DNA from: Octopus sinensis
Taxonomy: Eukaryota
Direction: 5' to 3'
Length of the DNA stretch: 17,838 bases
Assembly: GCF_006345805.1 (NCBI RefSeq)
Contig: NW_021824748.1
Location: 1 to 17,838 of the forward strand
Shown: one piece after another, positions 1-17,838 of the stretch
Layout: every line of letters starts with the position of its first letter
Numbering within the stretch: position 1 is the stretch's first letter
Position numbers and translations under genes: made by a program
Notes under the pieces: generated by a model
Seen by the model: the letters and a program-made list of their open reading frames with translations, nothing else
Databases searched by the model: none
What the model was told of the DNA's origin: nothing

Positions 1-440
1 AGGGGCGATGGCAAGAGGCCGGACGGCGTCTCGCTCTTCCCGTTCAAGTGCGGCAAAGCGATCGTCTGGGACGCGACATGCTCTGACACTTTTGCGTCAA
101 CATGCCTTCTCGCGTCCGCGATCGAAGCTGGCACAGCGGCGAGGAGGGCAGAGACCCGGAAGAAAGACAAGTACGCCTCGCTCGCCGACAGATTCTCTCT
201 TTGTGCCTGTTTCATCGAACACATCAGGCACATTCGGCCCAGCCACGCTACGTTTTCTCACCGAGAGAGGCCGTCACCTCGGGAGGATTAGAAACGACCC
301 CCGTGAGGTCAATCGGCTTTTTGAGCGCGTCTCAATAGCCGTACTCAGGGGGAACAGTTTTCTATTCTCTCTGCGGCTAGTAGCTGACTCCCCGTTCCAT
401 TTTCTTTTCTATAAAATTATGTATTTAAAAAAAAAAAAAA
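1..440 (+). mobile_element. 3' end of a CRE-clade non-LTR retrotransposon (restriction-like endonuclease domain, frameshifted) with poly(A) tail; 5' part lies outside the window
   Basis: Stitched frames read GKRPDGVSLFPFKCGKAIVWDATCSDT...K-KY..L.DRF.FVPVSSNTSGTFGPATLRFL...DPRE..RLFERVSIAVLRGN. This is the RPDG / WDxT / KxxKY / RGN signature of CRE-type RLE C-termini. A14 tail at 427-440. Confidence 0.85.
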
Positions 441-631
441 CTAAATTATTAATCGATTTATAAAAAAAATAATAAAAGGTAACTTATATTATTTTTGGAC
501 GTTGAATTCAAAAATGTTATCAGATATGAGATCAGACCTTCATACTTCGAGATCTAGAAATTGGTCCCTTATCTCCACGTAGAAATGTCTAACATAAAAA
601 TGAACTTGTTTTTTGGGTTCGCGAGAAAATT

Positions 632-1260
632 TTAGCTAATGCCAATGCATATTTCATCATTTCTCTTAATGCCTGCTTTGGCATTCCAGTCTCCTGTCAG
701 AAATAAGACTGTTGTCTTGTTTAATACGTTGCATAATTCTGAGAGGCTTGCGTAAAACTTGTCCAACTCATTAGAAGCAACCAACAGTCTCCCCGTATGG
801 GGTGCGTACACGTTGATGATGGATAAAGTATTACTTCCTTTCGATTTCAATTTAAATTGAATAATCGCGATGCGGTCATTAACACTCCAGACTTTGAGTT
901 CCCTCTTTTCCAGCGAGGCTCGAACAGTGAATCCCAATCCGTAGTGTCGGCACTCAGAGGGGAGAAATATAAGGCGGTATTTTCCATAAGCTTCATCTGC
1001 CCTTCCGCGACCTTTGTCTCTTGAAGACAGCACACATCGACCCCGTAACGGTCTAGGTCGTCGCATAAGCTATTCCGTTTTGACTTCGCTGACAGTCCTC
1101 TAACATTAAAAGAAGCAATAGTAAAAGGCCTCGATCGAATAGAACATGTTTGAGACATATCAAAGAGAGGTACGTCACCACCTCAACCAATCTTAATGGT
1201 CGCATGGCCATATGGATAGTAATCCATAAACTGAAAGTTCAAATCACAGCAAAAGGCGTA
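632..1260 (-). mobile_element. RTE-like LINE 5' portion: APE endonuclease N-terminus (one frameshift near 990) with putative 5' UTR; 3'-truncated
   Basis: TIASFNVRGL, VDVCCLQETK, HYGLGF, NDRIAIIQF, IINVYAP and LTGDWNAKAG are APE-endonuclease motifs typical of RTE-clade elements. No RT domain follows. The UTR extent is approximate. Confidence 0.8.
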
Positions 1261-2767: not shown

Positions 2768-3298
2768 AGATCTCCACTTGTGTGCAACCAATCGACCTGA
2801 TTTTTCCAGGACAACTGCCTCCCTTGAAGGTCTACTATTTTAACTTGTTCAAACTCCTCTAAACATTTTTACTATCTCATACTAAGGAACCATGTACGAT
2901 CTAACTTAAGATGTCAGACTTACAATGTAAATAAGAAAATAAATTAATTAATTAAAAATATTGTTATATATCAATTTTGATCTTTTATGAACGTTTTTGC
3001 ATGCAAAACTGGAGTCAGACGTTCCTAGACCTTAGTTTCTTTATAGGCTACTACAATGTATGCTAAGCCTATCCATAAGGGCCCTTCTACAAGAGGCCTG
3101 GAATTACGCAGTTTATTGATAAAATCTCTAGAATACATTAACAAATTCCCTAAACATATTATAAATTAGTTGATTAACAAATTTGAAAAGCTGAACTGTC
3201 TGAACTTTACATATTTCTAACTAAAAATGAGTCTTTATTTCCCGACAAAACACCCCCCCAAGATCTCCACTTGTGTGCAACCAATCGACCTGATTTTT
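2768..3298. repeat. 38-bp exact direct repeat pair (2768-2805 and 3261-3298)
   Basis: AGATCTCCACTTGTGTGCAACCAATCGACCTGATTTTT occurs at both positions. Confidence 0.9.
2953..3170 (+). repeat. ~218-bp dispersed repeat, left arm of an inverted pair with 6905-7122
   Basis: Direct alignment with the reverse complement of 6905-7122 shows roughly 90% identity by eye. Weaker homology may extend to ~2905. Confidence 0.9.
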
Positions 3299-3607
3299 TC
3301 AGACATAAGTTTAAATATGATAGTAAATTGTATTAGCCTGTTCAACCTTTTTTTGGACCTTCGTCCATGCCAAATCAAAGCCTTTTTGATAAACACGTGT
3401 CTCAATAAAGGAAATTTGTTCGAATATGTATTTAAAATTGACTGTTTAAGTTAAAAATATATTTAATGGTCCTTGAACAATTAGTATGTTGACATTCTTA
3501 TGTGCCTCCGATATGCGAGATCTCTCCAACGGCCTAATTGTTCTTAAATTTTACAGAATAACTAAAAGCCCGTTTTTACATAATTTTTCAAAAATCAAAT
3601 TTAAAAC

Positions 3608-4509
3608 AAATTGCCCAGAGAACAACTGTCCAAACAATATCACTACGATTTTGGACTCCGAGCTCTGAAATCAGTGCTTGTGATGGCCGGTGATTTGAAA
3701 AAAACTTCCCCTGATCTTTCGGAGGTCTCGTCTTTATCTAATGAGAACAGGAAGTGGTCCTGATGAGAACACTGAGAGATATGAACCAACCCAAATTCAT
3801 CTACGAAGACATCCCTCTGTTCCTTGGACTGATTTCCGACCTTTTCCCCGGGCTCGACTGTCCTCGAATTCGGTACCCAGGCTTCAATGGCGCGGTGGAA
3901 ACATCTTTGAGGGAAAATAATTACGTTTTGCTCGAATCACAAGTTGCCCCTTTTACTGATTCCGAAGGTTAACAAAGTGGTACAAATGCACGAGACAATG
4001 ATGACGAGGCACACCACCATGATCGTGGGGCCAACGGGGGGAGGCAAATCGGTGGTTATCAAAACGTTGGCCGATGCTCAAACGAGGTTATTTCGTCGAT
4101 CTACTCCAAGACTCGGGATACACACCAAACTATTCATTTTGAACCCAAAGGACAGGCCCGTCGTCAAATTATACGGAATATTAGATCCCACAACCCATGA
4201 TTGGACCGACGGGCTCCTTTCCAACATATTCCGCGAAATAAACCGGGCTCTGCCTCAGGACAAGAACGAAAGACGATATGTCGTGTTTGACGGCGACGTG
4301 GATGCGTGTGGGTGGAGAACATGAATTCCGTGATGGACGACAATAAACTGCTGACACTCGCCAACAGTGAGAGAATTCGACTCCAGTCCCACTGCGCACT
4401 GTTGTTTGAGGTTTGTTGCAGAAATCATTTTAGGTCGGTGATTTGAAGTATGCTTCTCCTGCTACTGTTTCCCGAGCTGGGATGGTTTATGTCGACCCCA
4501 AAAATGTCT
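3608..4509 (+). pseudogene. DNAH10: Internal fragment of axonemal inner-arm dynein heavy chain (end of AAA1 to AAA2 region), DNAH10-like, retaining 4 micro-introns
   Basis: Introns at 3725-3750, 3943-3967, 4087-4110 and 4411-4433. Spliced: [25 protein letters not shown]...MRTLRDMNQPKFIYEDIPLFLGLISDLFPGLDCPR...TRHTTMIVGPTGGGKS...DGDVDA(L)[19 protein letters not shown]...[26 protein letters not shown], closely matching the DNAH10 sequence as I recall it. There is a 1-nt deletion near 4307. Both ends break mid-exon. Confidence 0.9.
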
Positions 4510-5716
4510 AGCTTCAGCGAAAACTGACGTATTGATTGTTAACGAGACGAAGCTGAAGGGATCAAATAAAATTGAATTTGAAGGCTACAAATCCCTTAAT
4601 ATCCCCTGGAAAACTGACGCAGTAGCAGGAACCTCTGTCTTCTATAATGGAAGTATGAGAGTCAAAAACGGAAAGATTATTGAAGACAAGTCCTGTGAAC
4701 TTATATCGTTCGAACTACTTACAGCCGTTGGCTGGTTTACTGTCGGAGGGATGTATTCAAAGGCTTTGAGAAGCTACCCGGCAGTTGTTAGGACATTCTT
4801 TGAAGAGAACAATCTGGCTATCCTAGTCGGTTACCTGAACGCAAAGAATATTGTCTATGGGTGTGAAGCAACCAATACGGACGGAGAGGTTTTTGAGAGT
4901 TTGTCTCGAAATCTCGGTTTTTCGATATGGACGTCCGAAGAGCTAAACCACTATCCGGATAGAGGCAAACCGGATCGCCTTTTCTCTCCTCGGCGTCTAT
5001 TACTCCACTCTGTGATCGTCAGACAATCGAGGTGGATGTAGGAAGTGATCACATCCCGCAATCATTGAGGCTAAGGACGAAAATAAATCTGACAGAGGAC
5101 GTGTTTATTGGATATAATCTGTCGAATGTGGATTGGCATCTATTTGAGTACTCTATGCGCTTGGCACTTAATACTACCGTGCTCCGTTCTGTTCGGACCA
5201 TGAAGGATATCGACGACCTATCTAAGGTCATCAATTGTCGAATTTTTGGAAAAATTTACGGAAAAGAGAGTATTGAGAGCATCGGGCCCTTGTTTCCGCC
5301 AAACAGACAAAAAACTGTCGATGCTTATAACGAAGAAGGGCACCCTTCAGAATCACAGGAGGAGATGTTCCAACGTGGGGGTCAGAAATCAGTTAAAAGT
5401 TGAAATCAACCATCTCAAGACGATGATAGTAGAAATTGGCAAAAAGAAAATAGAAAAATCATGGAGAAAGGAACGCCGAATGCTGGATAAAAGAAATCCG
5501 AAGTTTTGGAAGGCGTATCAGCGCCTGAACAACGCGGAAGGGAAAGTCGACAATATTGTGTTAAAGGGGCAAGATGGAAAGTATATCCCCTCCGATCTTG
5601 TCCCGGATGAACTAAGAAGGCAGCTGGGTAGAACCCAAGAAGTCGAACCTGCATCAATTATTCCACAAAAGACCTTTGAGAAAGTCACTAAAGCCTTTCA
5701 ATTCTTATATTTATAA
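4510..5716 (+). mobile_element. 5'-truncated Jockey/I/CR1-like LINE ORF2 fragment: APE endonuclease plus linker, frameshifted
   Basis: DVLIVNETKL, GGMYS, VGYLNAKN..YGC..TN..G, PDR and GSDHIP are endonuclease motifs. A basic linker follows (FWKAYQRL). The clade is uncertain. Confidence 0.75.
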
Positions 5717-6904: not shown

Positions 6905-7122
6905 ACTGATTTATAATATTTTAGGGAATTTGTTAATGTATTCTAGAGATTTTATCAATAAACTGCATAATTCCAGTCCTCTTCTAGAAGGGTCCTTATG
7001 GATAGGCCATTAGCATACATTGTAGTAGCCTATAAAGAAACTAAGGTCTAGGAACGTCTGATTCTAGTTTTGCATGCAAAAACGTTATAAAACATCAAAA
7101 TTGATATATAACAATATTTTTA
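6905..7122 (-). repeat. ~218-bp dispersed repeat, right arm of an inverted pair with 2953-3170
   Basis: Reverse complement aligns to 2953-3170. Confidence 0.9.
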
Positions 7123-7153: not shown

Positions 7154-7800
7154 ATCTATGATCACTTGTGTGAAGAACTAGTCAAGATAATCCATGGTGA
7201 ATACACACCGGATGAGTGGTTCTATACTGGAATCACATACCCAAGGATCCAAAGATTTGAGACCAATTACTTGTATGTCTAACTTATATAAACTTGCAAC
7301 GAAATGTGTTAACAGGAAGTCGGGAGATTATATTGAGGCATATAATCTGATTGTCAATAATCAATTAGGAACTCGGCGAATGTGTCAAGGGGCAAAGGAA
7401 CAAGCAATTCTTAACCGGTGCATTCACAAGCAAAACGGAAATAATTTGTTTTCTACCTGGATTGATGTAAAAAAGCGTTCGATTTGGTAGATCACGACTT
7501 TCTGTTCCAGGTGCTTGAAAACTCCGGACTCCCTAGCTGGATTGTGAATTTTGTGAAGAACCTTGTAACGAAGTGGAGAATAAAGCTAATTCTGAATCAT
7601 AATGAAATCGGAGAGGTAAAATTGGAAAGAGGCATACTCCAGGGTGATTCCTTGTCACCTTATATCTTTACCCTGGTGATGGATCCTCTTAGTAGAATTC
7701 TGAATGCTAAGTACCCAAAAGTGATGATTGATAAACAAGATCAGGATTGTATTACATATACAACAAATCACTTACTGTTTATGGATGATCTAAAAATATT
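7154..7800 (+). mobile_element. R4/Dong/NeSL-like non-LTR reverse transcriptase fragment
   Basis: PDEWFYTGITY, DLRPITCMSNLYK, QLG..RMCQGAKEQ, WIDVKK(AFD)SVDH, RGILQGDSLSP and NHLLFMDDLK are present. Truncated right after the FMDD motif, with two frameshifts. Confidence 0.85.
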
Positions 7801-7829
7801 GAAATGTGTACATCTACATCTATGCAGGG

Positions 7830-9409
7830 AAAAATATTGGGAATGAACTTAAGTATGTTTTGCAAATGGGCGTAAAATTTATCAATTATATCTACTCTGT
7901 TTCGTCGACATAACTGTCCATTTTTGTTCTTTACAATTCTAAGGTACCCATCTTCCCCCAAACACGACCCCAACTATTTTTATATTTAATTTCTATGCCG
8001 GTTTTTTATGAGCCAGTATTCTTTTCCATTATCTACCCCATATCCAACGAGACACGCTGCATGTACGCTGTTACATCCAGGATCATCAAAAATTCCTATA
8101 ATGTTATACAATTATACCTCCTGAATACGAATACAAATATTTCGATATACAAATTGTAATTCCGAAAGGACCAATTTTCAGTAAAGTTCTTAATGCCAAA
8201 AAATGGTAAATATTGACATAATCTGTGACTACTATTGGATTGTTTTTATATCTGCATTCTTTTTTCTATTACAAAGTACAGTTTTATAAACCATTCCAAG
8301 ATAAGGGTACTGTTCAGTTGTGCTGATTCCCCCATTTTGAATGATATATTCATAAGCGTAATACTGGGATCCGCTTTTACATCGACAATATTCACAGCAA
8401 TCAAGCACGTTTTGTTTACTAAAACTAACCAACTTGTCATGCTTAATCGCATATTGATCTTCAAGACTGGCAATCTGAAGAGTAATTATTTATTTACCAA
8501 CCGCGCTGAATATATAACATGATTCAAAATTATGCTGATTTTTGACATTTATAACTACATTTTTATCTCCAGTCAAAAAATAATGAAAATCCTTTTCATT
8601 TTCTGAGAAAAAAGATGTTCCGTAGTCACTTGTGTCAAAATAATTTAATTTGTGTAGCTTTGGAAGTTCATCCTCAGTCTGGGAATATTTCTAACACAAA
8701 ACAACCATATCTGCGAACGAGTTTATTTCTAGTTTTTTTTTTTAATTAACAATAATTGATTAAAAGACAACGAAAAACGTTAAGTCCCAGCGGCAAGGAC
8801 GCAGTGTGCGTTGCCCCGAACAATGGCCAGGCCGATGCGCTGGCGGAACCAGAGGCCCTCTCTCGTGTCCTTGAGCCTCCTCCCGATGGACTACCCGACC
8901 TCTTTGAGGAACGAGTCAGTCTCCTTTCCCGCAGCTCCAGCGGTCTCCAGGGCGATTGCCGTAACGCGGTAGCGGTCCGCGAGCGAAGAATATTTTTGTA
9001 GTTTCATCTTTTCGGCGTGGTTTGCAGCCGAACAAGGGTTTGCGGCGGAAGAATGGATCCTCGATTTTGAAAAGGTATCCACAACGGTAACATCCCATAC
9101 GATGGCCTTCCCCGACGAGTACGGGAATATCTAGTTGGAAGGAAATGGCATTTCTTTTAAATTCCAAATTGTGTCTATCAATCAAAGCCAAATTATTTTG
9201 AAACTCTGTCTGATTGTATTTTTGTCGCTAAAAATTGTATATTTTAAATGCCAACTAATTTTTTAGTGAACTCTTCCCATCGCTGATTACTTTTTGTGCC
9301 ATATAAACTAATTAATTTTTTTCTTTTTCTTCCCAGAAATCTATTTCGGATTTGTAGTGATCAAAATAAGAATTGTCGCGATCAAAATCAGAAAAGATAA
9401 AAACAACAT
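7830..9409 (-). pseudogene. Cathepsin L-like (papain family C1A) cysteine protease with signal peptide and I29 prodomain, interrupted by a CRE insertion and frameshifts
   Basis: ATG at 9409 gives a hydrophobic leader (MLFLSFLILIATILILI). Then FQNNLALIDRHN (ERFNIN-like), SFQL|EINSFADMTEDE (GNFD-like), FDWR, VKNQHNFESCYIFSAIASLEDQYAIK, SFSKQNVLDC, NGGISTTEQYPY, VHAACLVGYG, YWLIKNRWG and GEDGYLRI. There are at least six 22-28-nt introns, one GC-AG (7973-7998). The 3' end is approximate. Confidence 0.85.
8733..9129 (-). mobile_element. 5'-truncated CRE-clade retrotransposon 3' end with poly(A) and 7-bp TSD
   Basis: IFPYSSGKAIVWDVTVVDTF...AEKMKLQKYSSL...ALETAG...RQRIGLAIVRGN. A11 tail (T run 8733-8743). 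TCTAGTT is duplicated at 8728-8734 and 9130-9136. Confidence 0.88.
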
Positions 9410-10004
9410 TTTTAAATTTGATTAAAAAATTAAAAGAACAATTATTCATTAATTGTTTCTATTCTTACACACAAATATATAAGCACGAAGAATCACAATT
9501 TTCTTAAGTTAAACTTGTAAAATATCTTTTCTATATACAATTTAAAAAATTAATTAATAAAGCAGCCGAAATACATTTTCTCATTTTGAATGCTACAAAT
9601 CTGCAAAAACATCAAAAATTAAATAAATATAAGTTGGAATTTAATCAAATTTATTTCAAAAGTTGGGTTTTTCTGAAAAGTACATAAGTCGAGATTAATG
9701 AAAAATTACTTTAACTAGTTTGTAATTAAAGTATTAAAGAGATAACGGCAAAAAATTTGAAATTATCTGGAAAGATTCCCAGTAAAACTCTTCTAAACAA
9801 CCTGCTAATCTGAAGATGGGAATCGAAATCGTCCCGTATTCCATGTAAAGTTCGACCTCTAAATGAGGCACTAAGTGCCTCAAATCAGAGGTTTCCCCAA
9901 AAAAGAGGTTTTTCAAAAAGTTCAATAAATAAAGAAAAAGAACATTATTTTTTAAAATAATCAGTTAATTTTTCTCCATATTTATATTTATTTTTAATTC
10001 CTAA

Positions 10005-11547
10005 CTACACTTTCTTTCTGATTTCATAAAAATCATGAAGAGAATCTGGAATCAAATCAAAGATGTTTGTCTCTAAGTTTTCCATCAAACTTAAAATTTG
10101 TGATATTGATGGTTCGCAGCTTATATTCTCATAGATATTTGGATCATTATCTTCTATTTCATCAAAACATTCATCAATAACATTATTAAATATTTCTTCA
10201 GATGATTCATTTATGCAACTCGAGTCTGATGGAAATTGTCGAAAAACCTTTTGCCAGCAGTTATAAATAATATCCGCAGATACATTATTCCAAGCATCTG
10301 AGATTATTGTTACCACTTATCGCAAATTTAATTTGGATAAAGACTCTATAAACAAATCCTGGTCATCTTGAAAACATAAAAAATCAATTAGACAATTCCA
10401 ATAATGGAAACATAAATATTTGCAAGAAAGAAATTAAAGATAGCTATGTTAATTAAAGGCCTCACGAGACACCCGACCAGCCTCGCGAATGGCGAAGCCG
10501 TTCCCTCGGATCACAGCAATCGACAGACGTTCCAGGAGCCAAGAAAACTCTCTTGGATCGTGACTAGTCCTTGAAATCCGTCGACCGAGCGAGCGAAGGA
10601 AGCGGAGTGTCTTGGGACCGAAGATCCCGGAGGACCGAAGATTCCAATAATTATCCTTGATTCCAGCATCCAATGGTTGAAGTATTGGTGTCGTATTTTT
10701 TGGTAAAATAAAAAATCAACGTTGCTAAATGTCGATATTTTGTGGCAAGCAGCGTTATCTAATAACATTAAGATTTTTCTTTTTTGAATAATCATTTTTT
10801 CATTAATTTTTTTGAGCCATGATATAAAAATATCTCTTGTCATCCACGCATTTTTGGACGAAGAGTATGAAATTCCATAAATTTCGGGAGAAAATTTTTT
10901 GAAACATCTAGGATTTCTATATTTTCCGATTATTAATGGTTCATATTTTTCTCCAGTGTAACTACAGCATAGATGAAGAGTAACTTTATCTTTACTCCTT
11001 TTAAAGCCCCGTGCCGAATCACCAGTTTTCACGAATGATTTACGTGGGGTAAGTTTGATAAAAAGAGAAGTTTCGTCACAATTAAAAATGTTCTCCTTTC
11101 AATATTGTTCAACTTTGATATTTAATTCTGATAAAAAATTCAAAATTATCGCATGATCAGCAGATGCGGATTCGCCTGACAATGTTCGGAATTTTAATTC
11201 ATGCCTCTGCTTGAATTTTTCTAACAATCTATTTGAAGCTTTAAACTTGTTTAAGCCCATTCTCGAAGAAACAGTTAGGGAAATTTTTTTTAAAGAGTTC
11301 CAGAAACTGGAACATTCTGATCCCTTAGACGCTGAAAAATATCAAGGACTTTTTCATCAAGTCCGTTTTTATTTTCACTTAATGATGAGGAAAGAAATCC
11401 TTTTTTGATAAATGGAAGAATATTCTTTTTTATACGAAAAATAGTTCCCTTGCTAGTATTGTACATTATGGATAATCTCCTCTCAGAATGTTCTTTCTTT
11501 AAAAGATGATCAGCAATCTTCAACTTGGTTTCATAATTCAAAGGCAT
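10005..11547 (-). pseudogene. Tigger/pogo transposase (HTH-psq, CENP-B HTH, DDE_1), frameshifted and interrupted
   Basis: MPLNYETKLKI...NVPVSG, FKASNRLLEKFKQRH, IFNCDETSLF, GFKRSKDKVTLHLCCSYTGEK..PLIIGK..NPRCFK, KNAWMTRDIF..WL, LMLLDNAACH, QPLDAGI and ISDAWNNVSADIIYNCWQK. Confidence 0.92.
10406..10640 (-). mobile_element. Short CRE-clade 3' fragment inserted in the pogo transposase; 11-bp TSD, no poly(A)
   Basis: SGIFGPKTLRFLRSLGRRISRTSHDPREFSWLLERLSIAVIRGN. ATTCCAATAAT is duplicated at 10395-10405 and 10641-10651. Removing the insert restores QPLDAGIKDNYWNCLIDFL. Confidence 0.85.
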
Positions 11548-11948: not shown

Positions 11949-12279
11949 TTTTATAAATTGGTTAAAAAATTTATAATGCCCCAAAACAGAGTTTTCCCCA
12001 AAAAAGAGGTGCCCCACCCCTGGAGGTGCGCCCCAATTAGAGGTCGGACTGTACCAACATCTCAGCCTAAATACGATGCTAGTCCCCTTTAAAGGGAATT
12101 TTATATCAATTCTTTAAGCGTTTCTCAGATTTAATTAAAACACTTAATAAAAATTTTAAAAATGGTTTCTATAAAAAGTTTGTTAGGTCAATTTTTGTAA
12201 TTAAGTCAATTTTAAATAAAACTAAGAACAAAATTCAAAAGTCCAGATAATTTTTTTTTATAAATTATGTTAGTTGCCC

Positions 12280-12587: not shown

Positions 12588-15143
12588 TTAAAAATCAACA
12601 ACAGGAGTAGCACTAGCAGTCTGCAAAGAATACTTCATTTTAGCCGGATAGTTGGTATTATTAATCAATGAATAAGATATCCCTACCATAACACACAATT
12701 TCTACCATCCAACACTTCATAGAAATTCCCCCTCCACATCACAAAAGAATCACTTTCGTCAATCTCCATCTCTACAGTCCCAGCCTGCACTGTCAAAATC
12801 TAGAATTTTATACCTCACAACTAACTAAAAATATCCCCTCCAAAGTCACCAACGGCTTTCTAGAATGAGGAAACAGCACCAACAATCCAAATAAATTGGG
12901 CCTGTCATCACAGTGGGAATACACCGCGTGTGTCTCAAAGGACTCCAACAGTTGTACTCTCCTCACAATCGACACTAAACAAACTAATAAACACTAAAAT
13001 AACACTGATCTCTAACTTCCCTCAAATTAGAAGTAAATTGAGGAATAATGACATTATTGGGTTTTGACTTGATTGGGTCGTTATGAACTAAATTGACTTT
13101 ATACCAACTCACGATATGAACGGAGGTGTTTTGTTATCCCCACAATCTGCAACCCATAGCCAAAGTCCGAATATTTAATCCTCTCTCCATTAAAAGGGTC
13201 TAGCCCGACCACTCGTACTCGATTTGACTGGCGAGATGACAACGGGTTCAATTCAGGCACAACTTTAAATTAGTTACACACAAACTTATTCTAGCTCGGA
13301 TTCCATCCGCTGCCAATCGCTATGTACGTTTAGTTAACAAGCCCATACCTCGTTGATTCCCTCAAATCTGGCGATTATGTCAGCGATAGGTTCTTCATCG
13401 GCTATGGGCATCATCGAATCATTTATTCTGCCACTTGAGAGACGTGTCCTTTTATTACGTCGTTTTTTCTTGTTCTTAGCCTTCCTGATATATATACTAA
13501 TATTAAATAAAACCACTTTCGGGGTGATCCATCAGGGATATCAGCCATCATCAGATCCGTCCCAATTTGTTTATCAACCATTACCGGAGAATTAATTTCC
13601 ATAACCACTTTCTCTGCTAAAATTTCATCAGTATACAGACTAGGATCACTAAAAATGTGTATCAGGACACAACATACCCAACTTTGACGGAATTTGTTAC
13701 TCGAATTGGACTATTGAGTTCCGAATTTACAGTCGAAGAGGGGGAAAATGACACATTAGGATTATTTTCAATAAAAATGTTGCCGGAATTCAATGATTCT
13801 CGATTTTTGTTCAAGGAGGGGCCAACGAGGATCACATCCTCAGGTTCGCTATCAGAACTAGCAATAAAAGTGACTCGTCTTTTTTTTTTCTTCGATAGAT
13901 ATTCCTCAAAATCAAAATGAACACCTTCCTTCTCAACAATCTTACCCACCTCGCCAAAATGAGTCTTGTTCTTGCTCTTGTCTCGACTGGAAAGGTTTTC
14001 ACGTGCAGTCGTGTTTCGACCTTTCTTTAAAATGGACACTGTCGATTTGGAATGAGGGACACCAGTGGTCACTTGTCCAAAATTAGGATTCTTTTGATGG
14101 ATGACAGGCTCATCTTGTATTATATGACTTTTGGCTTTAGAGTTTTCCTTATTGTATAATCTTTTCGAGTTTTTTGACGACTTTTTTGGCGAAATTGAAT
14201 CAGATATATTCAAATTAGAACCTTCGTGGCCCATAACAGTCTCTTGTCCCAAGAAATGCGTTTTATCAGAATTTTTATCATAGGAAACTTCACGAGTGCG
14301 ATTATTATGGCTATTTTTGGCCATTCTTGAAACTCTCTTGGTTGAATTTCTGCTATTTTCAACACCAGAAGGTAATTCGTAGATGATTTCGACATCTTCT
14401 ATCTCGTGTCCCGAGGATTGGGGGTTCTCATCAGCCAAATCAGAGAAATAATCACTTCTATCCACATCTGTCCCAGCTTGAAATCCCAAAGATATCATTT
14501 CAGGTCTATTCTGACTCTTTTGTGTAGAGTCTCTTTGAACTGAGGCGATTGAGATATCCTGGGGATCATCCCTCCATAAAGGGTTTTGCCTTTCTTGCTC
14601 AATACTCATCTTGTAGGTCGAATTCGGCCACTTTGAGTGAGAAACCTTACGAGTAATCAATCCTTGTACAGGTCCTCCAATTGAGGATTTTAATAACTTT
14701 GTTAAATTGGCATATTCAGAGCTTCTTAGCATGTCATCCATGATAGGGGACTCCGCAGGGAACAATTCGGCGGTTTTTTCAGATTTTTTGCTATTTCTGT
14801 CCACATTTGATGACCTTGGTTGGAATTTTACTACTGATGGATGATTTGTCTTATCTTTCGGTGCTGAAAATAAACGTAGATAGTTATTCTGTGGGATTAA
14901 GATGGAATTTTTAACCAAAATGCTCCTGTCTTGTATTGGTGGAGGATTTCCATGGCTCTGTTCTTCGTAACGAGTGCTTTCTAATCCGCTAATGTCGTGA
15001 TCTTGGTCATTTGGGTGGATTTGGATTTCTGGTTGTTTAGAGCAGGGCAATTACCGTCAGGGAGAAGAAGCTTGTGCGTTTTTTTATTTCCAAGTTCCTT
15101 TAATATTCTTTTTTTACTAAAAGTTGTTATTATTTGACATCAT
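12588..15143 (-). CDS. CENPC: CENP-C/Mif2-like inner kinetochore protein (~762 aa, 11 exons, no frameshift required)
   Basis: GT-AG introns at 15138-15117, 15054-15029, 13677-13649, 13516-13485, 13348-13320, 13285-13263, 13112-13088, 13003-12975, 12813-12785 and 12705-12683 give a 2289-nt open frame. The protein has a long S/K/R-rich disordered region, RQSNRVRVVGLDPFNGERIKY (CENP-C-motif-like), and a cupin-like C-terminus (LFGLLVLFPHSRKP...GTVEMEI...FVMWRGNFYEVLDGISYSLINNTNYPAKMKY). The first 5-nt exon and the 12813 donor are the least certain parts. Confidence 0.7.
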
Positions 15144-15326
15144 TTTTGAAGATTAAAATATAATTAATGTCACCGGCCGTAGGATGGACGGCGCCGTTGA
15201 GTGGACACTAAGCAATATTTTTAATTAAAAATATTTTTACAATAATAATCTCCATTAAAAAATCAAAATTATTTAAATAATTTATTAAATATTCCTAATT
15301 TTTGTTTAATTAAGAATCGCGTGAGA

Positions 15327-16036
15327 ATGGTTTTGTTGTATCTATTGCAATCCTTTGTTGAAAAATTAATTAATTATATTGAAACTGGCTTGATAGAAGA
15401 TGAAACACAGAGGAAAGAACGTTTTAAAATACGTTCTCTCTCAAAAAATTTTATTTATGAGCAATCTGTGCTTTTCATTCTGAAAAATGGTAAAAAACTA
15501 AGATTCTTCACAATCGAACAAAATGAATTTAAGATGAAAACAATTGAGGTAAATATAAAATCACATTTTGTAGGCTGAACACAATTTAAACCATTTTGGT
15601 CGTGATAGGCTTTATTCCAAACTCTGTGAAGAAATTTATCCGATTACGAGAAAAGAGGTCCTTACTGTTGTTAGCCGGTGTGAAGTTTGCCAGGTTTAAT
15701 ATTTATGAGCAATATAGGCAGACATTACAGAAGAAAATACAGTTGCAATATTAGAACAGAGAAATAATGTAGTAGAAAATTTAGAAAAAGCAGGAGCGAA
15801 AATGTCTAAAAAAGGAAATGGAAATTCGACGAAAAGGATATAAATGTCGGAGATTCTGTTATTATCCGACATGATAGAGACGCAAATGTGAATAATAGGA
15901 AATATCATCTTCACAATGAAATATCTTCAGAGAAATTTTATATCGTCGACAAAAAAATAATTTATGTGTGTTAAAAGATGAAAATGGAACAGAAATTGAA
16001 TCCATTCACATTAGTAGACTCAAACGATTAGTTTAA
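15327..16036 (+). CDS. Integrase-derived protein (~220 aa): H2C2 zinc-binding domain plus C-terminal domain, DDE/rve catalytic core absent; 2 micro-introns, 2 probable homopolymer frameshifts
   Basis: Introns at 15549-15573 and 15694-15717. Exon 2 = AEHNLNHFGRDRLYSKLCEEIYPITRKEVLTVVSRCEVCQ (HxxxH...CxxC). Exon 3 = ...RNNVVENLEKAGAKM...DINVGDSVII...ENGTEIESIHISRLKRLV*, if one A is added in each of the runs 15808-15813 and 15951-15957. Confidence 0.7.
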
Positions 16037-16099
16037 ATTTTTGGTTAATAAAATTTTAAAAATTGTATAAAAAGTTTTTCAACTTAAAATAAGAAGCAA

Positions 16100-17093
16100 A
16101 CACACCGCGGCCGAAGGCCGCATAGGGGAATAGTTGGATTCCAAAAAAATCCGGCCGTAGGCCAATTGGTTTAGGTTGGACCTTAAAAACTACACACCGC
16201 GGCCGAAGGCCGCATAGGGGAATAGTTGGATTCCAAAAAAATCCGGCCGTAGGCCAATTGGTTTAGGTTGGACCTTAAAAACTACACACCGCGGCCGAAG
16301 GCCGCATAGGGGAATAGTTGGATTCCAAAAAAATCCGGCCGTAGGCCAATTGGTTTAGGTTGGACCTTAAAAACTACACACCGCGGCCGAAGGCCGCATA
16401 GGGGAATAGTTGGATTCCAAAAAAATCCGGCCGTAGGCCAATTGGTTTAGGTTGGACCTTAAAAACTACACACCGCGGCCGAAGGCCGCATAGGGGAATA
16501 GTTGGATTCCAAAAAAATCCGGCCGTAGGCCAATTGGTTAGGTTGGACCTTAAAAACTACACACCGCGGCCGAAGGCCGCATAGGGGAATAGTTGGATTC
16601 CAAAAAAATCCGGCCGTAGGCCAATGGTTTAGGTTGGACCTTAAAAACTACACACCGCGGCCGAAGGCCGCATAGGGGAATAGTTGGATTCCAAAAAAAT
16701 CCGGCCGTAGGCCAATTGGTTTAGGTTGGACCTTAAAAACTACACACCGCGGCCGAAGCCGCATAGGGGAATAGTTGGATTCAAAAAAATCCGGCCGTAG
16801 GCCAATTGGTTTAGGTTGGACCTTAAAAACTACACACCGCGGCCGAAGGCCGCATAGGGGAATAGTTGGATTCCAAAAAAATCCGCCGTAGGCCAATGGT
16901 TTAGGTTGGACCTTAAAAACTACACACCGCGGCGAAGGCCGCATAGGGGAATAGTTGGATTCCAAAAAAATCCGGCCGTAGGCCAATGGTTTAGGTTGGA
17001 CCTTAAAAACTACACACCGCGGCCGAAGGCCGCATAGGGGAATAGTTGGATTCCAAAAAAATCCGGCCGTAGGCCAATTGGTTTAGGTTGGAC
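16100..17093. repeat. Tandem array of ~10.9 copies of a 92-bp GC-rich multi-hairpin unit
   Basis: Units start at 16100, 16192, 16284, 16376, 16468, 16559, 16650, 16742, 16832, 16922 and 17012. They differ only by single-base deletions. Confidence 0.98.
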
Positions 17094-17838
17094 TTACTAC
17101 CTGAAAGCCTAAGGCTGGATAAGAAGTAATACGTATGCAGCAATTAAGGTTTGGTTAGGGTTCCCTTTAGAAATCTGTACTGGTCATCTCTAAAATTGCT
17201 GTTAGGATACCAACGTCTATTTTATTTAATAAATTTTACAAATAAATTCGATTTATAACTATTAAAAAGTATTATTTTAAATGGTAAACCTCGAAATATA
17301 ATAAACATTATGATTTTTAATCAATAATCGTAGAAAAAACGGTGTGGTTGGTTTTGTTAGCTCTCTTATTTTCTCAAAAGTCACCAAATTCATCGAAAAT
17401 AGGCTTAAAATGGGACTTGGAAAAAATAAGGTATGTTTTATATGAGCAAAATTGAAATAAATGAGATTTTGAAAGTGTCCAACGAACGGCGCCGTCCAGC
17501 CTACGGCCGGTGACAATTAATATTAATTTTATACAATCGTCGATCCATTGTTGCTCTGAATAAACACACAAGTTGTTGTTGCGCAATAAATTAATATGCG
17601 CCATTATATATTTGGTTTATATTTAAAAACAATTAAATTCTCGATTCTGAATGCTTCAAAAATTAATTTGTGTGATTTACGATAACGTATTTTTTAGGAA
17701 AATACTATCAAACGGAAAAAACGACTTGATTTTAAACTAAACAGTTCTAAGCTGATTTGTTAATTCTATTGTTCAACAAAAGCTTTAAGTTTTCCTGAAG
17801 CGACAAAAAATTTGTTTTGAAAGTAAAGGTTGTTTTCC

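What the first reader, a model, noticed from the sequence alone, without database searches (positions are those of the whole stretch)
12588..15143. Cryptic, highly divergent CENP-C-like gene with a non-canonical centromere-targeting motif
Seen: ten micro-introns splice into one uninterrupted 762-aa frame. The motif RQSNRVRVVGLDPFNGERIKY keeps the SxR arginine and GERxxY, but replaces PLxYW with GLDPF. A second partial motif, RRNKRTRL (~13435-13460), lacks aromatics. A cupin-like domain ends the protein. Known: the CENP-C motif uses this Arg plus the Tyr/Trp pair to read the acidic patch and the CENP-A tail, and the cupin dimerises. Inference: a CENP-C orthologue likely missed by standard annotation, implying a co-evolved unusual CENP-A C-terminus in this lineage.
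Basis: partly seen in the sequence, partly recalled or inferred. Interest (0 to 1): 0.72.

Follow-up and report, generated by a model that had tools for sequence, protein, structure and literature searches.

The report
Divergent CENP-C gene with micro-introns
The region holds a real, intact gene for the kinetochore protein CENP-C in an animal genome with 20-32 base introns (probably a dicyemid); its centromere-binding motif is divergent, but no more so than in related invertebrates, so the finding is ordinary.

Summary
On the minus strand, 15143..12588, eleven exons joined by ten GT-AG introns of 20-32 nt give one open frame.

The last 200 residues are a CENP-C motif (aa 584-604) followed by a C-terminal Mif2/CENP-C cupin (aa 672-753).
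- Pfam CENP-C_C is the best hit, E 0.0017, 19 bits, below the gathering score of 29.
- A motif+cupin profile built from 117 family members scores 41.4 bits. The best of 2000 shuffles scores 4.3.
- hhalign gives 94.5 % probability, E 7.5e-8, over 185 columns.
- The only two PDB hits of the motif exon are CENP-C motif peptides.
- Junctions 6, 9 and 10 are uniquely favoured by homology.

So this is a CENP-C family member. Its best pairwise matches are mostly spiralian CENP-Cs.

The "non-canonical" motif (RQ for RR, GLDPF for PLxYW) keeps the invariant arginine, an aromatic residue and GERxxY. Mollusc and leech CENP-Cs vary at the same positions, so nothing requires an unusual CenH3 tail.

RRNKRTRL sits in a lysine/arginine run and is more likely a nuclear localisation signal. 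"Missed by annotation" cannot be tested. The cupin fold could not be predicted because the tool refuses spliced sequences.

The parts
12588..15143 (-). Whole CENP-C-like coding region: 11 exons, 10 micro-introns, 766 aa in the best model
   Evidence: Splice model and translation. Junction test. Family profile match.
15139..15143 (-). Coding part of exon 1 (ATGAT), followed by intron 1 (15138-15117, 22 nt)
   Evidence: This is the only ATG-initiated way into the exon 2 frame. Inferred from frame only. An alternative acceptor at 15108 is also possible.
15055..15116 (-). Exon 2, followed by intron 2 (15054-15029, 26 nt)
   Evidence: Frame continuity. Homology does not discriminate the junction.
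13678..15028 (-). Exon 3: 450 codons, a Ser/Lys/Asn-rich N-terminal and middle region with no detectable similarity to anything. Followed by intron 3 (13677-13649, 29 nt)
   Evidence: Long ORF. No Pfam family. No similarity to 164 CENP-C family proteins. No database homologue.
13517..13648 (-). Exon 4, followed by intron 4 (13516-13485, 32 nt)
   Evidence: Frame continuity. Several alternative junctions are equally allowed.
13349..13484 (-). Exon 5, holding the basic run. Followed by intron 5 (13348-13320, 29 nt)
13439..13462 (-). RRNKRTRL (aa 525-532) inside KKAKNKKKRRNKRTRL: a basic patch, probably a nuclear localisation signal and not a second CENP-C motif
   Evidence: Matches only the basic half of the motif, profile positions 29-41, 4.7 bits, E 0.5. 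No hydrophobic or aromatic half and no GERxxY follows.
13286..13319 (-). Exon 6, followed by intron 6 (13285-13263, 23 nt)
   Evidence: Junction 6 is uniquely best against the family profile. Alternatives lose 2.5-16 bits.
13113..13262 (-). Exon 7, the CENP-C motif exon. Followed by intron 7 (13112-13088, 25 nt)
   Evidence: As an unspliced six-frame piece it is the best match in the window to the family profile: 17.5 bits, E 6e-5. Its only PDB hits are the CENP-C motif peptides 4x23_V and 7bxt_K.
13171..13233 (-). CENP-C motif RQSNRVRVVGLDPFNGERIKY (aa 584-604)
   Evidence: Gapless alignment to rat VRRSNRIRLKPLEYWRGERIDY. Column statistics. Profile domain of 13.6 bits over aa 571-617.
12995..13087 (-). 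Exon 8, the linker between motif and cupin. Followed by intron 8 (12994-12975, 20 nt)
   Evidence: Frame continuity. Homology does not discriminate the junction.
12826..12974 (-). Exon 9, first part of the cupin. Followed by intron 9 (12825-12800, 26 nt)
   Evidence: Junction 9 is uniquely best. Alternatives lose 6-19 bits.
12706..12799 (-). Exon 10, middle of the cupin. Followed by intron 10 (12705-12683, 23 nt)
   Evidence: Junction 10 is uniquely best. Alternatives lose 6-15 bits.
12588..12682 (-). Exon 11: end of the cupin, a short tail and the TAA stop (12590-12588)
12630..12924 (-). Mif2/CENP-C-type cupin core (aa 672-753), spanning exons 9-11
   Evidence: Pfam PF11699: E 0.0017, 19 bits, profile 15-81 of 85. 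Family profile: 19.7 bits with a single one-residue gap. hhalign: 94.5 % probability. The invariant Gly, Lys, Gly, Tyr and Asn columns are kept.

Best explanation
This is the CENP-C (Mif2/Cnp3/HCP-4 family) gene of a fast-evolving animal with micro-introns, most probably the dicyemid Dicyema japonicum or a close relative.

Inferred from the family:
- The motif's basic half, including the kept invariant Arg of SxR, docks on the H2A/H2B acidic patch of the CenH3 nucleosome.
- The hydrophobic half (Leu, Phe) contacts the hydrophobic CenH3 C-terminal tail.
- The cupin dimerises the protein, so two motifs act together.
- The long, disordered, unconserved N-terminal two thirds carries short linear motifs that recruit the outer kinetochore (Mis12 complex) and whatever other inner-kinetochore (CCAN) subunits remain.
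- The Lys/Arg run 50 residues upstream of the motif probably serves nuclear import.
For: - Splice model with ten GT-AG introns of 20-32 nt and no stop codon.
- Introns 6, 9 and 10 are uniquely favoured by homology.
- The same intron size class is anchored by homology in the neighbouring dynein fragment and is documented for D. japonicum.
- Pfam CENP-C_C is the top hit, E 0.0017.
- The only PDB hits of the motif exon are CENP-C motif peptides.
- A profile of 117 CENP-C C-termini scores 41.4 bits on the candidate against at most 4.3 bits for 2000 shuffles. It gives two collinear domains, motif then cupin.
- hhalign gives 94.5 % probability, E 7.5e-8, over 185 aligned columns.
- All residues invariant across 12 diverse CENP-Cs are kept.
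- Seven of the ten best pairwise matches are named, and all seven are animal proteins. Four are named CENP-C or Mif2/CENP-C cupin proteins by a source, and five are spiralian: nemertean, leech (two) and gastropods. This fits a dicyemid.
- Host clues: GC about 36 %, LINE and pogo repeats, and an axonemal DNAH10-type dynein, so a ciliated lineage. Compare the D. japonicum genome at 36.7 % GC and 49 % repeats.
Against: - The Pfam score (19 bits) is below the gathering score (29).
- phmmer of the C-terminus finds no solved cupin.
- No homologue was found by direct database search.
- The N-terminal 555 aa match no CENP-C region or Pfam family.
- Several near-invariant residues are changed: second Arg to Gln, Pro to Gly, Tyr to Pro, and the Pro of the VPxGN strand to Leu.
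- There is no transcript evidence for the junctions.
- The fold could not be predicted.
- The rest of the genome could not be searched for a better copy.
Confidence: 0.87

Rival explanations
1. This is a true CENP-C whose altered motif (RQ instead of RR, GLDPF instead of PLxYW) reflects a changed mode of nucleosome recognition that co-evolved with an unusual CenH3 C-terminal tail.
For: Gln at the second Arg is rare: 115/117 family members have Arg. Gly at the Pro position was not seen in 117 sequences. Pro at the first aromatic position was not seen either.
Against: The invariant Arg, the Leu, an aromatic residue at the Trp position, GER and Tyr are all kept. 16/117 members lack the Pro, 14/117 lack Tyr, Trp or Phe at the first aromatic position, and 22/117 lack Trp. 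These include named mollusc and leech CENP-Cs. Recognition is thought to depend on tail hydrophobicity and not on sequence (PMC5371998). Dicyemid proteins evolve fast in general (PMC6543705, abstract).
Confidence: 0.12
2. This is a decaying or subfunctionalised paralogue, and the working CENP-C is encoded elsewhere in the genome.
For: The cupin score is low, 19-20 bits against 80 bits or more for the listed family members. Several near-invariant residues are lost. The locus sits among transposon remains and next to a dynein fragment with a frameshift.
Against: A 2.3-kb frame stays open across eleven exons. All ten introns have GT-AG ends. Residues invariant in the family are retained. The genome is reduced to about 5000 genes, which makes paralogues less likely.
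Confidence: 0.07
3. This is an unrelated cupin-containing protein with a chance arginine-rich stretch. CENP-C has been lost, as in some holocentric insects.
For: Cupins are common, and each separate match is weak: motif E 0.14 against the PDB, cupin below the Pfam cut-off.
Against: Motif and cupin match one profile collinearly with the family's spacing, at the extreme C-terminus. The joint score is 41.4 bits against at most 4.3 bits for shuffles, and hhalign covers 185 columns. Generic cupin families do not appear among the Pfam hits.
Confidence: 0.02

Closest known systems
CENP-C / Mif2 / Cnp3 family. Pfam PF11699 CENP-C_C. Solved cupins: 7X85, 2VPV, 6O2D, 6O2K. Full-length entries: 7XHN, 7ON1. 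Motif-nucleosome complexes: 4X23, 7BXT.
   Same: A CENP-C motif lies about 70 residues upstream of a C-terminal cupin that ends the protein. The invariant Arg, Ser, Arg, Leu, GER and Tyr of the motif are kept. So are the invariant Gly, Lys, Gly, Tyr and Asn of the cupin. The N-terminal part is long, basic and serine-rich, and unconserved.
   Different: Second Arg to Gln. PLxYW becomes GLDPF. VPxGN becomes VLDGI. The linker between motif and cupin is short and lacks the usual Lys/Arg run, which sits upstream of the motif here. No Mif2_N, CENP_C_N or CENP-C_mid region is detectable. The Pfam score is below the gathering cut-off.
Spiralian CENP-Cs: Tubulanus polymorphus XP_074643319.1, Helobdella robusta T1FRW1 and T1G805, Patella vulgata XP_055956396.1, Haliotis rufescens XP_046336990.2, Batillaria attramentaria KAG5710273.1.
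   Same: These are among the best pairwise matches to the candidate, each with two collinear segments, motif and cupin. Their motifs also depart from PLxYW: TLESH, VLDGW, TLDWY, PIEWF.
   Different: Pairwise scores are only 18-23 bits. These proteins keep RR. None has Gly-Leu-Asp-Pro-Phe.
Vertebrate CENP-C with two nucleosome-binding regions: the central region (RRISRRPSDWW in human) plus the CENP-C motif.
   Same: An Arg-rich stretch (RRNKRTRL) lies upstream of the true motif.
   Different: The upstream stretch has no aromatic or hydrophobic half. It scores 4.7 bits, E 0.5, and is embedded in a Lys run. Nothing here supports a second nucleosome-binding site.

Membership tests
CENP-C / Mif2 family | CENP-C motif: basic R-x-S-x-R-x-R half, then a Leu/aromatic half, then G/N-E-R-x-x-Y | tested here: met
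   Gapless match to the rat and chicken motif peptides, which are the only PDB hits. Profile domain of 13.6 bits (17.5 bits for the exon alone, E 6e-5 in the six-frame search). The residue invariant in 117/117 members is kept. Four near-invariant positions are changed.
CENP-C / Mif2 family | C-terminal cupin domain homologous to PF11699 (CENP-C_C) | tested here: met
   PF11699 is the top Pfam hit, E 0.0017, covering profile positions 15-81 of 85. At 19 bits it is below the gathering score of 29. The family-specific profile gives 19.7 bits with a single one-residue gap. hhalign gives 94.5 %, E 7.5e-8. The shuffle control reaches at most 4.3 bits against 41.4 for the candidate.
CENP-C / Mif2 family | Architecture: motif directly N-terminal to the cupin, with the cupin at the extreme C-terminus | tested here: met
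   Motif at aa 584-604 and cupin at aa 672-753 of 766. The two are collinear in a single hhalign and HMM alignment.
CENP-C / Mif2 family | The cupin folds as a jelly-roll beta-barrel and dimerises | not testable with these tools
No other route was tried. The only support is the near-gapless profile alignment to families with solved cupins.
CENP-C / Mif2 family | N-terminal Mis12-complex-binding region and CCAN-binding regions (Mif2_N, CENP_C_N, CENP-C_mid) | tested here: inconclusive
   No Pfam hit at E up to 10. No similarity of aa 1-555 to 164 family proteins. These regions are short and poorly conserved between phyla, so absence of a match is weak evidence.
CENP-C / Mif2 family | Binds CenH3 nucleosomes and localises to centromeres | not testable with these tools
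   This needs an experiment.
CENP-C / Mif2 family | It is the orthologue: the best or only such gene in its genome | not testable with these tools
   The source genome is not in any searchable collection. No protein of the organism is in the database.
Second nucleosome-binding 'central region' of vertebrate CENP-C | Arg anchor plus a pair of aromatic residues about 8 residues downstream | tested here: not met
   RRNKRTRLSSGRINDSMMP has no aromatic residue. It scores 4.7 bits, E 0.5.

The most novel reading that the evidence does not exclude
In dicyemids the hydrophobic half of the CENP-C motif has been remodelled (Gly-Leu-Asp-Pro-Phe, with Gln replacing the second Arg) together with the CenH3 C-terminal tail. 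This would be a lineage-specific recognition code in an animal with a drastically reduced genome and possibly a reduced inner kinetochore.
Probability: 0.1. Interest if true: 0.4.

Novelty: new member of a known kind. Interest (0 to 1): 0.22.

Why it matters
It shows that an animal with one of the most reduced genomes and the shortest introns known keeps the CENP-C route of kinetochore assembly, which implies a CenH3-based centromere. It supplies a hand-checked gene model with ten micro-introns, three of them anchored by homology, that could help train or check annotation of such genomes. It adds one more divergent sequence to the range of tolerated variation in the CENP-C motif. It does not change how CENP-C is understood.

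Tried and rejected
- Direct homology search with the full 766-aa protein found nothing at E <= 0.01.
- phmmer of the C-terminal 204 aa against PDB sequences found nothing at E <= 10.
I did not look for a way round this. The cupin fold therefore rests on profile alignment.
- A 31-aa motif query was too short for the protein search.
- Exhaustive enumeration of all splice paths through the 3' exons timed out. An earlier run started in the wrong phase and was discarded. I replaced them with a junction-by-junction test.
- The N-terminal 555 aa showed no conserved segment against 164 family proteins.
- I tested 'missed by annotation' by asking whether the organism's proteome is in the database at all. 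The neighbouring dynein's best hit is 70 % identical, so the proteome is not there and the question stays open.
- A literature search for CENP-C together with Dicyema found no paper.
- Myxozoan origin was considered and rejected as less likely. The window carries an axonemal dynein (DNAH10-type) fragment, and myxozoans are non-ciliated; that last point is from my own knowledge. The only myxozoan GC figure I read is H. salminicola at 29 %; the window's 36 % fits D. japonicum at 36.7 %.
- That all ten introns are non-3n is not independent evidence, because I could only see introns that change the frame.

Full report
**What is in the sequence**

The feature lies on the minus strand. A 1.39-kb open frame (15050-13665) is followed downstream by short open pieces in alternating frames. 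Ten GT...AG segments of 22, 26, 29, 32, 29, 23, 25, 20, 26 and 23 nt join these pieces. The result is one frame from the ATG at 15143 to the TAA at 12590-12588, giving 766 aa.

An alternative intron 7 (13104-13068, 37 nt) gives exactly that length, and homology cannot separate the two. The coordinates, the number of introns, and both quoted peptides are confirmed: RQSNRVRVVGLDPFNGERIKY at 13233-13171 and RRNKRTRL at 13462-13439.

**Are such introns credible?**

Yes. The same window carries a fragment of an axonemal dynein heavy chain of the DNAH10 type, E 1e-76 to solved DNAH10 chains. Alignment to highly conserved orthologues fixes its exons. They are joined by introns of 26 nt (3725-3750), 25 nt (3943-3967) and 23 nt (4411-4433).

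Introns with a median below 30 nt are documented in animals only for myxobolid myxozoans and for the dicyemid Dicyema japonicum. In both, splice signals are reduced to little more than GTa...AG (PMC13644364).

The window points to a dicyemid (inference):
- Its GC is about 36 %.
- It holds LINE endonuclease and reverse-transcriptase remains and a pogo-type transposase.
- It holds a ciliary dynein.
- The D. japonicum genome has 36.7 % GC and 49 % repeats rich in LINEs (PMC6736024).
- Myxozoans lack cilia. This last point is from my own knowledge.

**What the protein is**

- *Pfam.* Pfam's best hit for the whole protein and for its last 204 aa is CENP-C_C (PF11699). It has E 0.0017 and 19 bits and covers profile positions 15-81 of 85. 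This is below the gathering score of 29.
- *Motif exon against the PDB.* At E <= 10 it finds only two chains out of 177,635. Both are CENP-C motif peptides bound to nucleosomes, 4x23_V and 7bxt_K, and both align without gaps.
- *Building a family profile.* I retrieved vertebrate CENP-C C-termini (the query was written from memory and matched database proteins at up to 95 % identity). I aligned six of them (A1) and searched the 1.84-billion representative library. This gave 1174 family members at E <= 0.001. From the 150 listed I trimmed 117 that cover motif and cupin and built a profile.
- *Profile result.* On the candidate it gives two collinear domains: motif at aa 571-617 (13.6 bits) and cupin at aa 672-753 (19.7 bits). 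On the C-terminal 206 aa the total is 41.4 bits, against at most 4.3 bits for 2000 shuffles.
- *hhalign.* The C-terminus against the family alignment gives 94.5 % probability, E 7.5e-8, over 185 columns from the motif to the last strand.
- *Unspliced control.* In an unspliced six-frame search of the whole window, the four best pieces are exons 7, 5, 10 and 11 of this gene.
- *Conserved residues.* In an alignment with 12 diverse members (A2), every column invariant in the others is also kept in the candidate: Arg, Ser, Arg and Tyr of the motif, and Gly, Lys, Gly, Tyr and Asn of the cupin. A profile of A2 finds all solved CENP-C, Mif2 and Cnp3 cupins.

**Support for the splice model**

For each intron I listed every alternative GT-AG pair nearby that keeps the frame open, and scored the products with the family profile.
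- Junctions 6, 9 and 10 lie in conserved sequence. For these my model is uniquely best, and alternatives lose 2.5 to 19 bits.
- Junctions 1-5, 7 and 8 lie in unconserved sequence and are not discriminated. The length is therefore uncertain by a few residues.
- The 5' end (a 5-nt coding start, then a 22-nt intron) is the only ATG-initiated solution nearby. It remains an inference.

**How unusual is the motif?**

Column counts over 117 members:

| Motif position | Family | Candidate |
|---|---|---|
| Arg of SxR | Arg in 117/117 | Arg (kept) |
| Following Arg | Arg in 95/117 | Arg (kept) |
| Leu | Leu in 98/117 | Leu (kept) |
| Glu of GER | Glu in 113/117 | Glu (kept) |
| Final Tyr | Tyr in 111/117 | Tyr (kept) |
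| Second Arg of RR | Arg in 115/117 | Gln |
| Pro | Pro in 101/117, Gly in none | Gly |
| First aromatic | Tyr, Trp or Phe in 103/117 | Pro |
| Trp | Trp 95, Tyr 14, Phe 2 | Phe |

So the motif is divergent, but the aromatic contact and the arginine anchor survive.

The same positions vary in other invertebrates:
- Patella vulgata CENP-C has TLESH.
- The two Helobdella proteins have VLDGW and TLDWY.
- Haliotis has PIEWF.
- Unnamed members have RLNHL, RLNCD and RLNRD.

A review of the structural work states that CENP-C reads the greater hydrophobicity of the CENP-A tail rather than a specific sequence (PMC5371998). The inference of a co-evolved, unusual CenH3 tail is therefore not required by the data. 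I give it about 0.1.

**The 'second motif'**

RRNKRTRL sits in KKAKNKKKRRNKRTRL. It matches only the basic half of the profile (4.7 bits, E 0.5) and has no aromatic residue after it. A nuclear localisation signal is the simpler reading (inference).

In most family members a Lys/Arg run lies between motif and cupin. Here that linker is short, and the basic run lies upstream of the motif.

**The rest of the protein**

Residues 1-555 are Ser/Lys/Asn-rich. They match no Pfam family, no CENP-C region in 164 family proteins and no database protein. This is usual for CENP-C, whose N-terminal functions rest on short, fast-evolving linear motifs.

**Relatives**

The best pairwise matches, at 18-23 bits, each have a motif segment and a cupin segment. 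Seven of the ten are named:
- Spiralians: Tubulanus (nemertean), Helobdella (leech, two proteins), and Patella, Batillaria and Haliotis (gastropods).
- Others: Glandiceps (hemichordate) and Trichoplax (placozoan).

Four of the named ones are called CENP-C or Mif2/CENP-C cupin proteins by a source. The predominance of spiralians fits the placement of dicyemids within Spiralia (PMC6543705 and PMC6736024, abstracts).

**What could not be done**

- The structure predictor and the representative search refuse spliced sequences. I did not seek another route, so the cupin fold is supported only by near-gapless profile alignment.
- The source genome is in none of the searchable collections. Even the conserved dynein has no hit above 70 % identity. 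Whether the gene was missed by annotation, and whether a better copy exists elsewhere, remain open.
- No paper in the library mentions CENP-C together with Dicyema.

**Verdict**

- The identification as CENP-C is well supported (0.87).
- The claims of a special recognition mode and of a second motif are not supported.
- This is a new, divergent member of a well-known family in a poorly annotated, fast-evolving lineage. It is a useful annotation but not a surprise.

Noticed in passing
window 3605-4508 (+): Fragment of an axonemal dynein heavy chain of the DNAH10 type, covering about residues 2040-2330 of about 4500. Its exons are joined by homology-anchored introns of 26, 25 and 23 nt. There is a one-base frameshift relative to the conserved ...DGDVDA/(L,V)WVENMNS... 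at about 4306/4307, so this is either a pseudogene or an assembly indel. No further dynein exons are visible on either side.
   Followed up: partly
window 2953-3154 and 6920-7122: Long inverted repeats, three adjoining arm pairs of 45-88 nt at 89-97 % complementarity. They bracket the dynein fragment and the LINE-like ORFs (4532-5716). This may be a transposon-like unit that captured a gene fragment, or nested insertions.
   Followed up: no
window 16100-17093 (array extends about 16008-17195): Tandem array of a 92-nt unit, 10.9 copies at 98 % matches in the core. It is bounded by 50-nt inverted repeats at 15160-15209 and 17474-17523. The proximal arm lies only about 20 nt upstream of the CENP-C start codon, so the gene's promoter region is very short or lies within the repeat element.
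   Followed up: partly
window 632-1158 (-), 4532-5716 (+), 7194-7846 (+): LINE remains: an AP-endonuclease domain (Exo_endo_phos, E 3e-6) and a reverse transcriptase (RVT_1, E 1e-11). The frames are broken.
   Followed up: partly
window 10005-11547 (-): pogo/Tigger-type transposase (DDE_1, E 8e-21) with an upstream helix-turn-helix-like ORF, split over several frames. Short direct repeats at 9876-9909 and 11977-12010 may mark its ends.
   Followed up: no
window 1-500 and 10449-10673: Two GC-rich ORFs share a similar peptide: ...GTFGPATLRFLTERGRHLGRIRNDPREVNRLFERVSIAVLRGNSF... and ...GIFGPKTLRFLRSLGRRISRTSHDPREFSWLLERLSIAVIRGNGF... This is probably a repeated element of unknown type.
   Followed up: no
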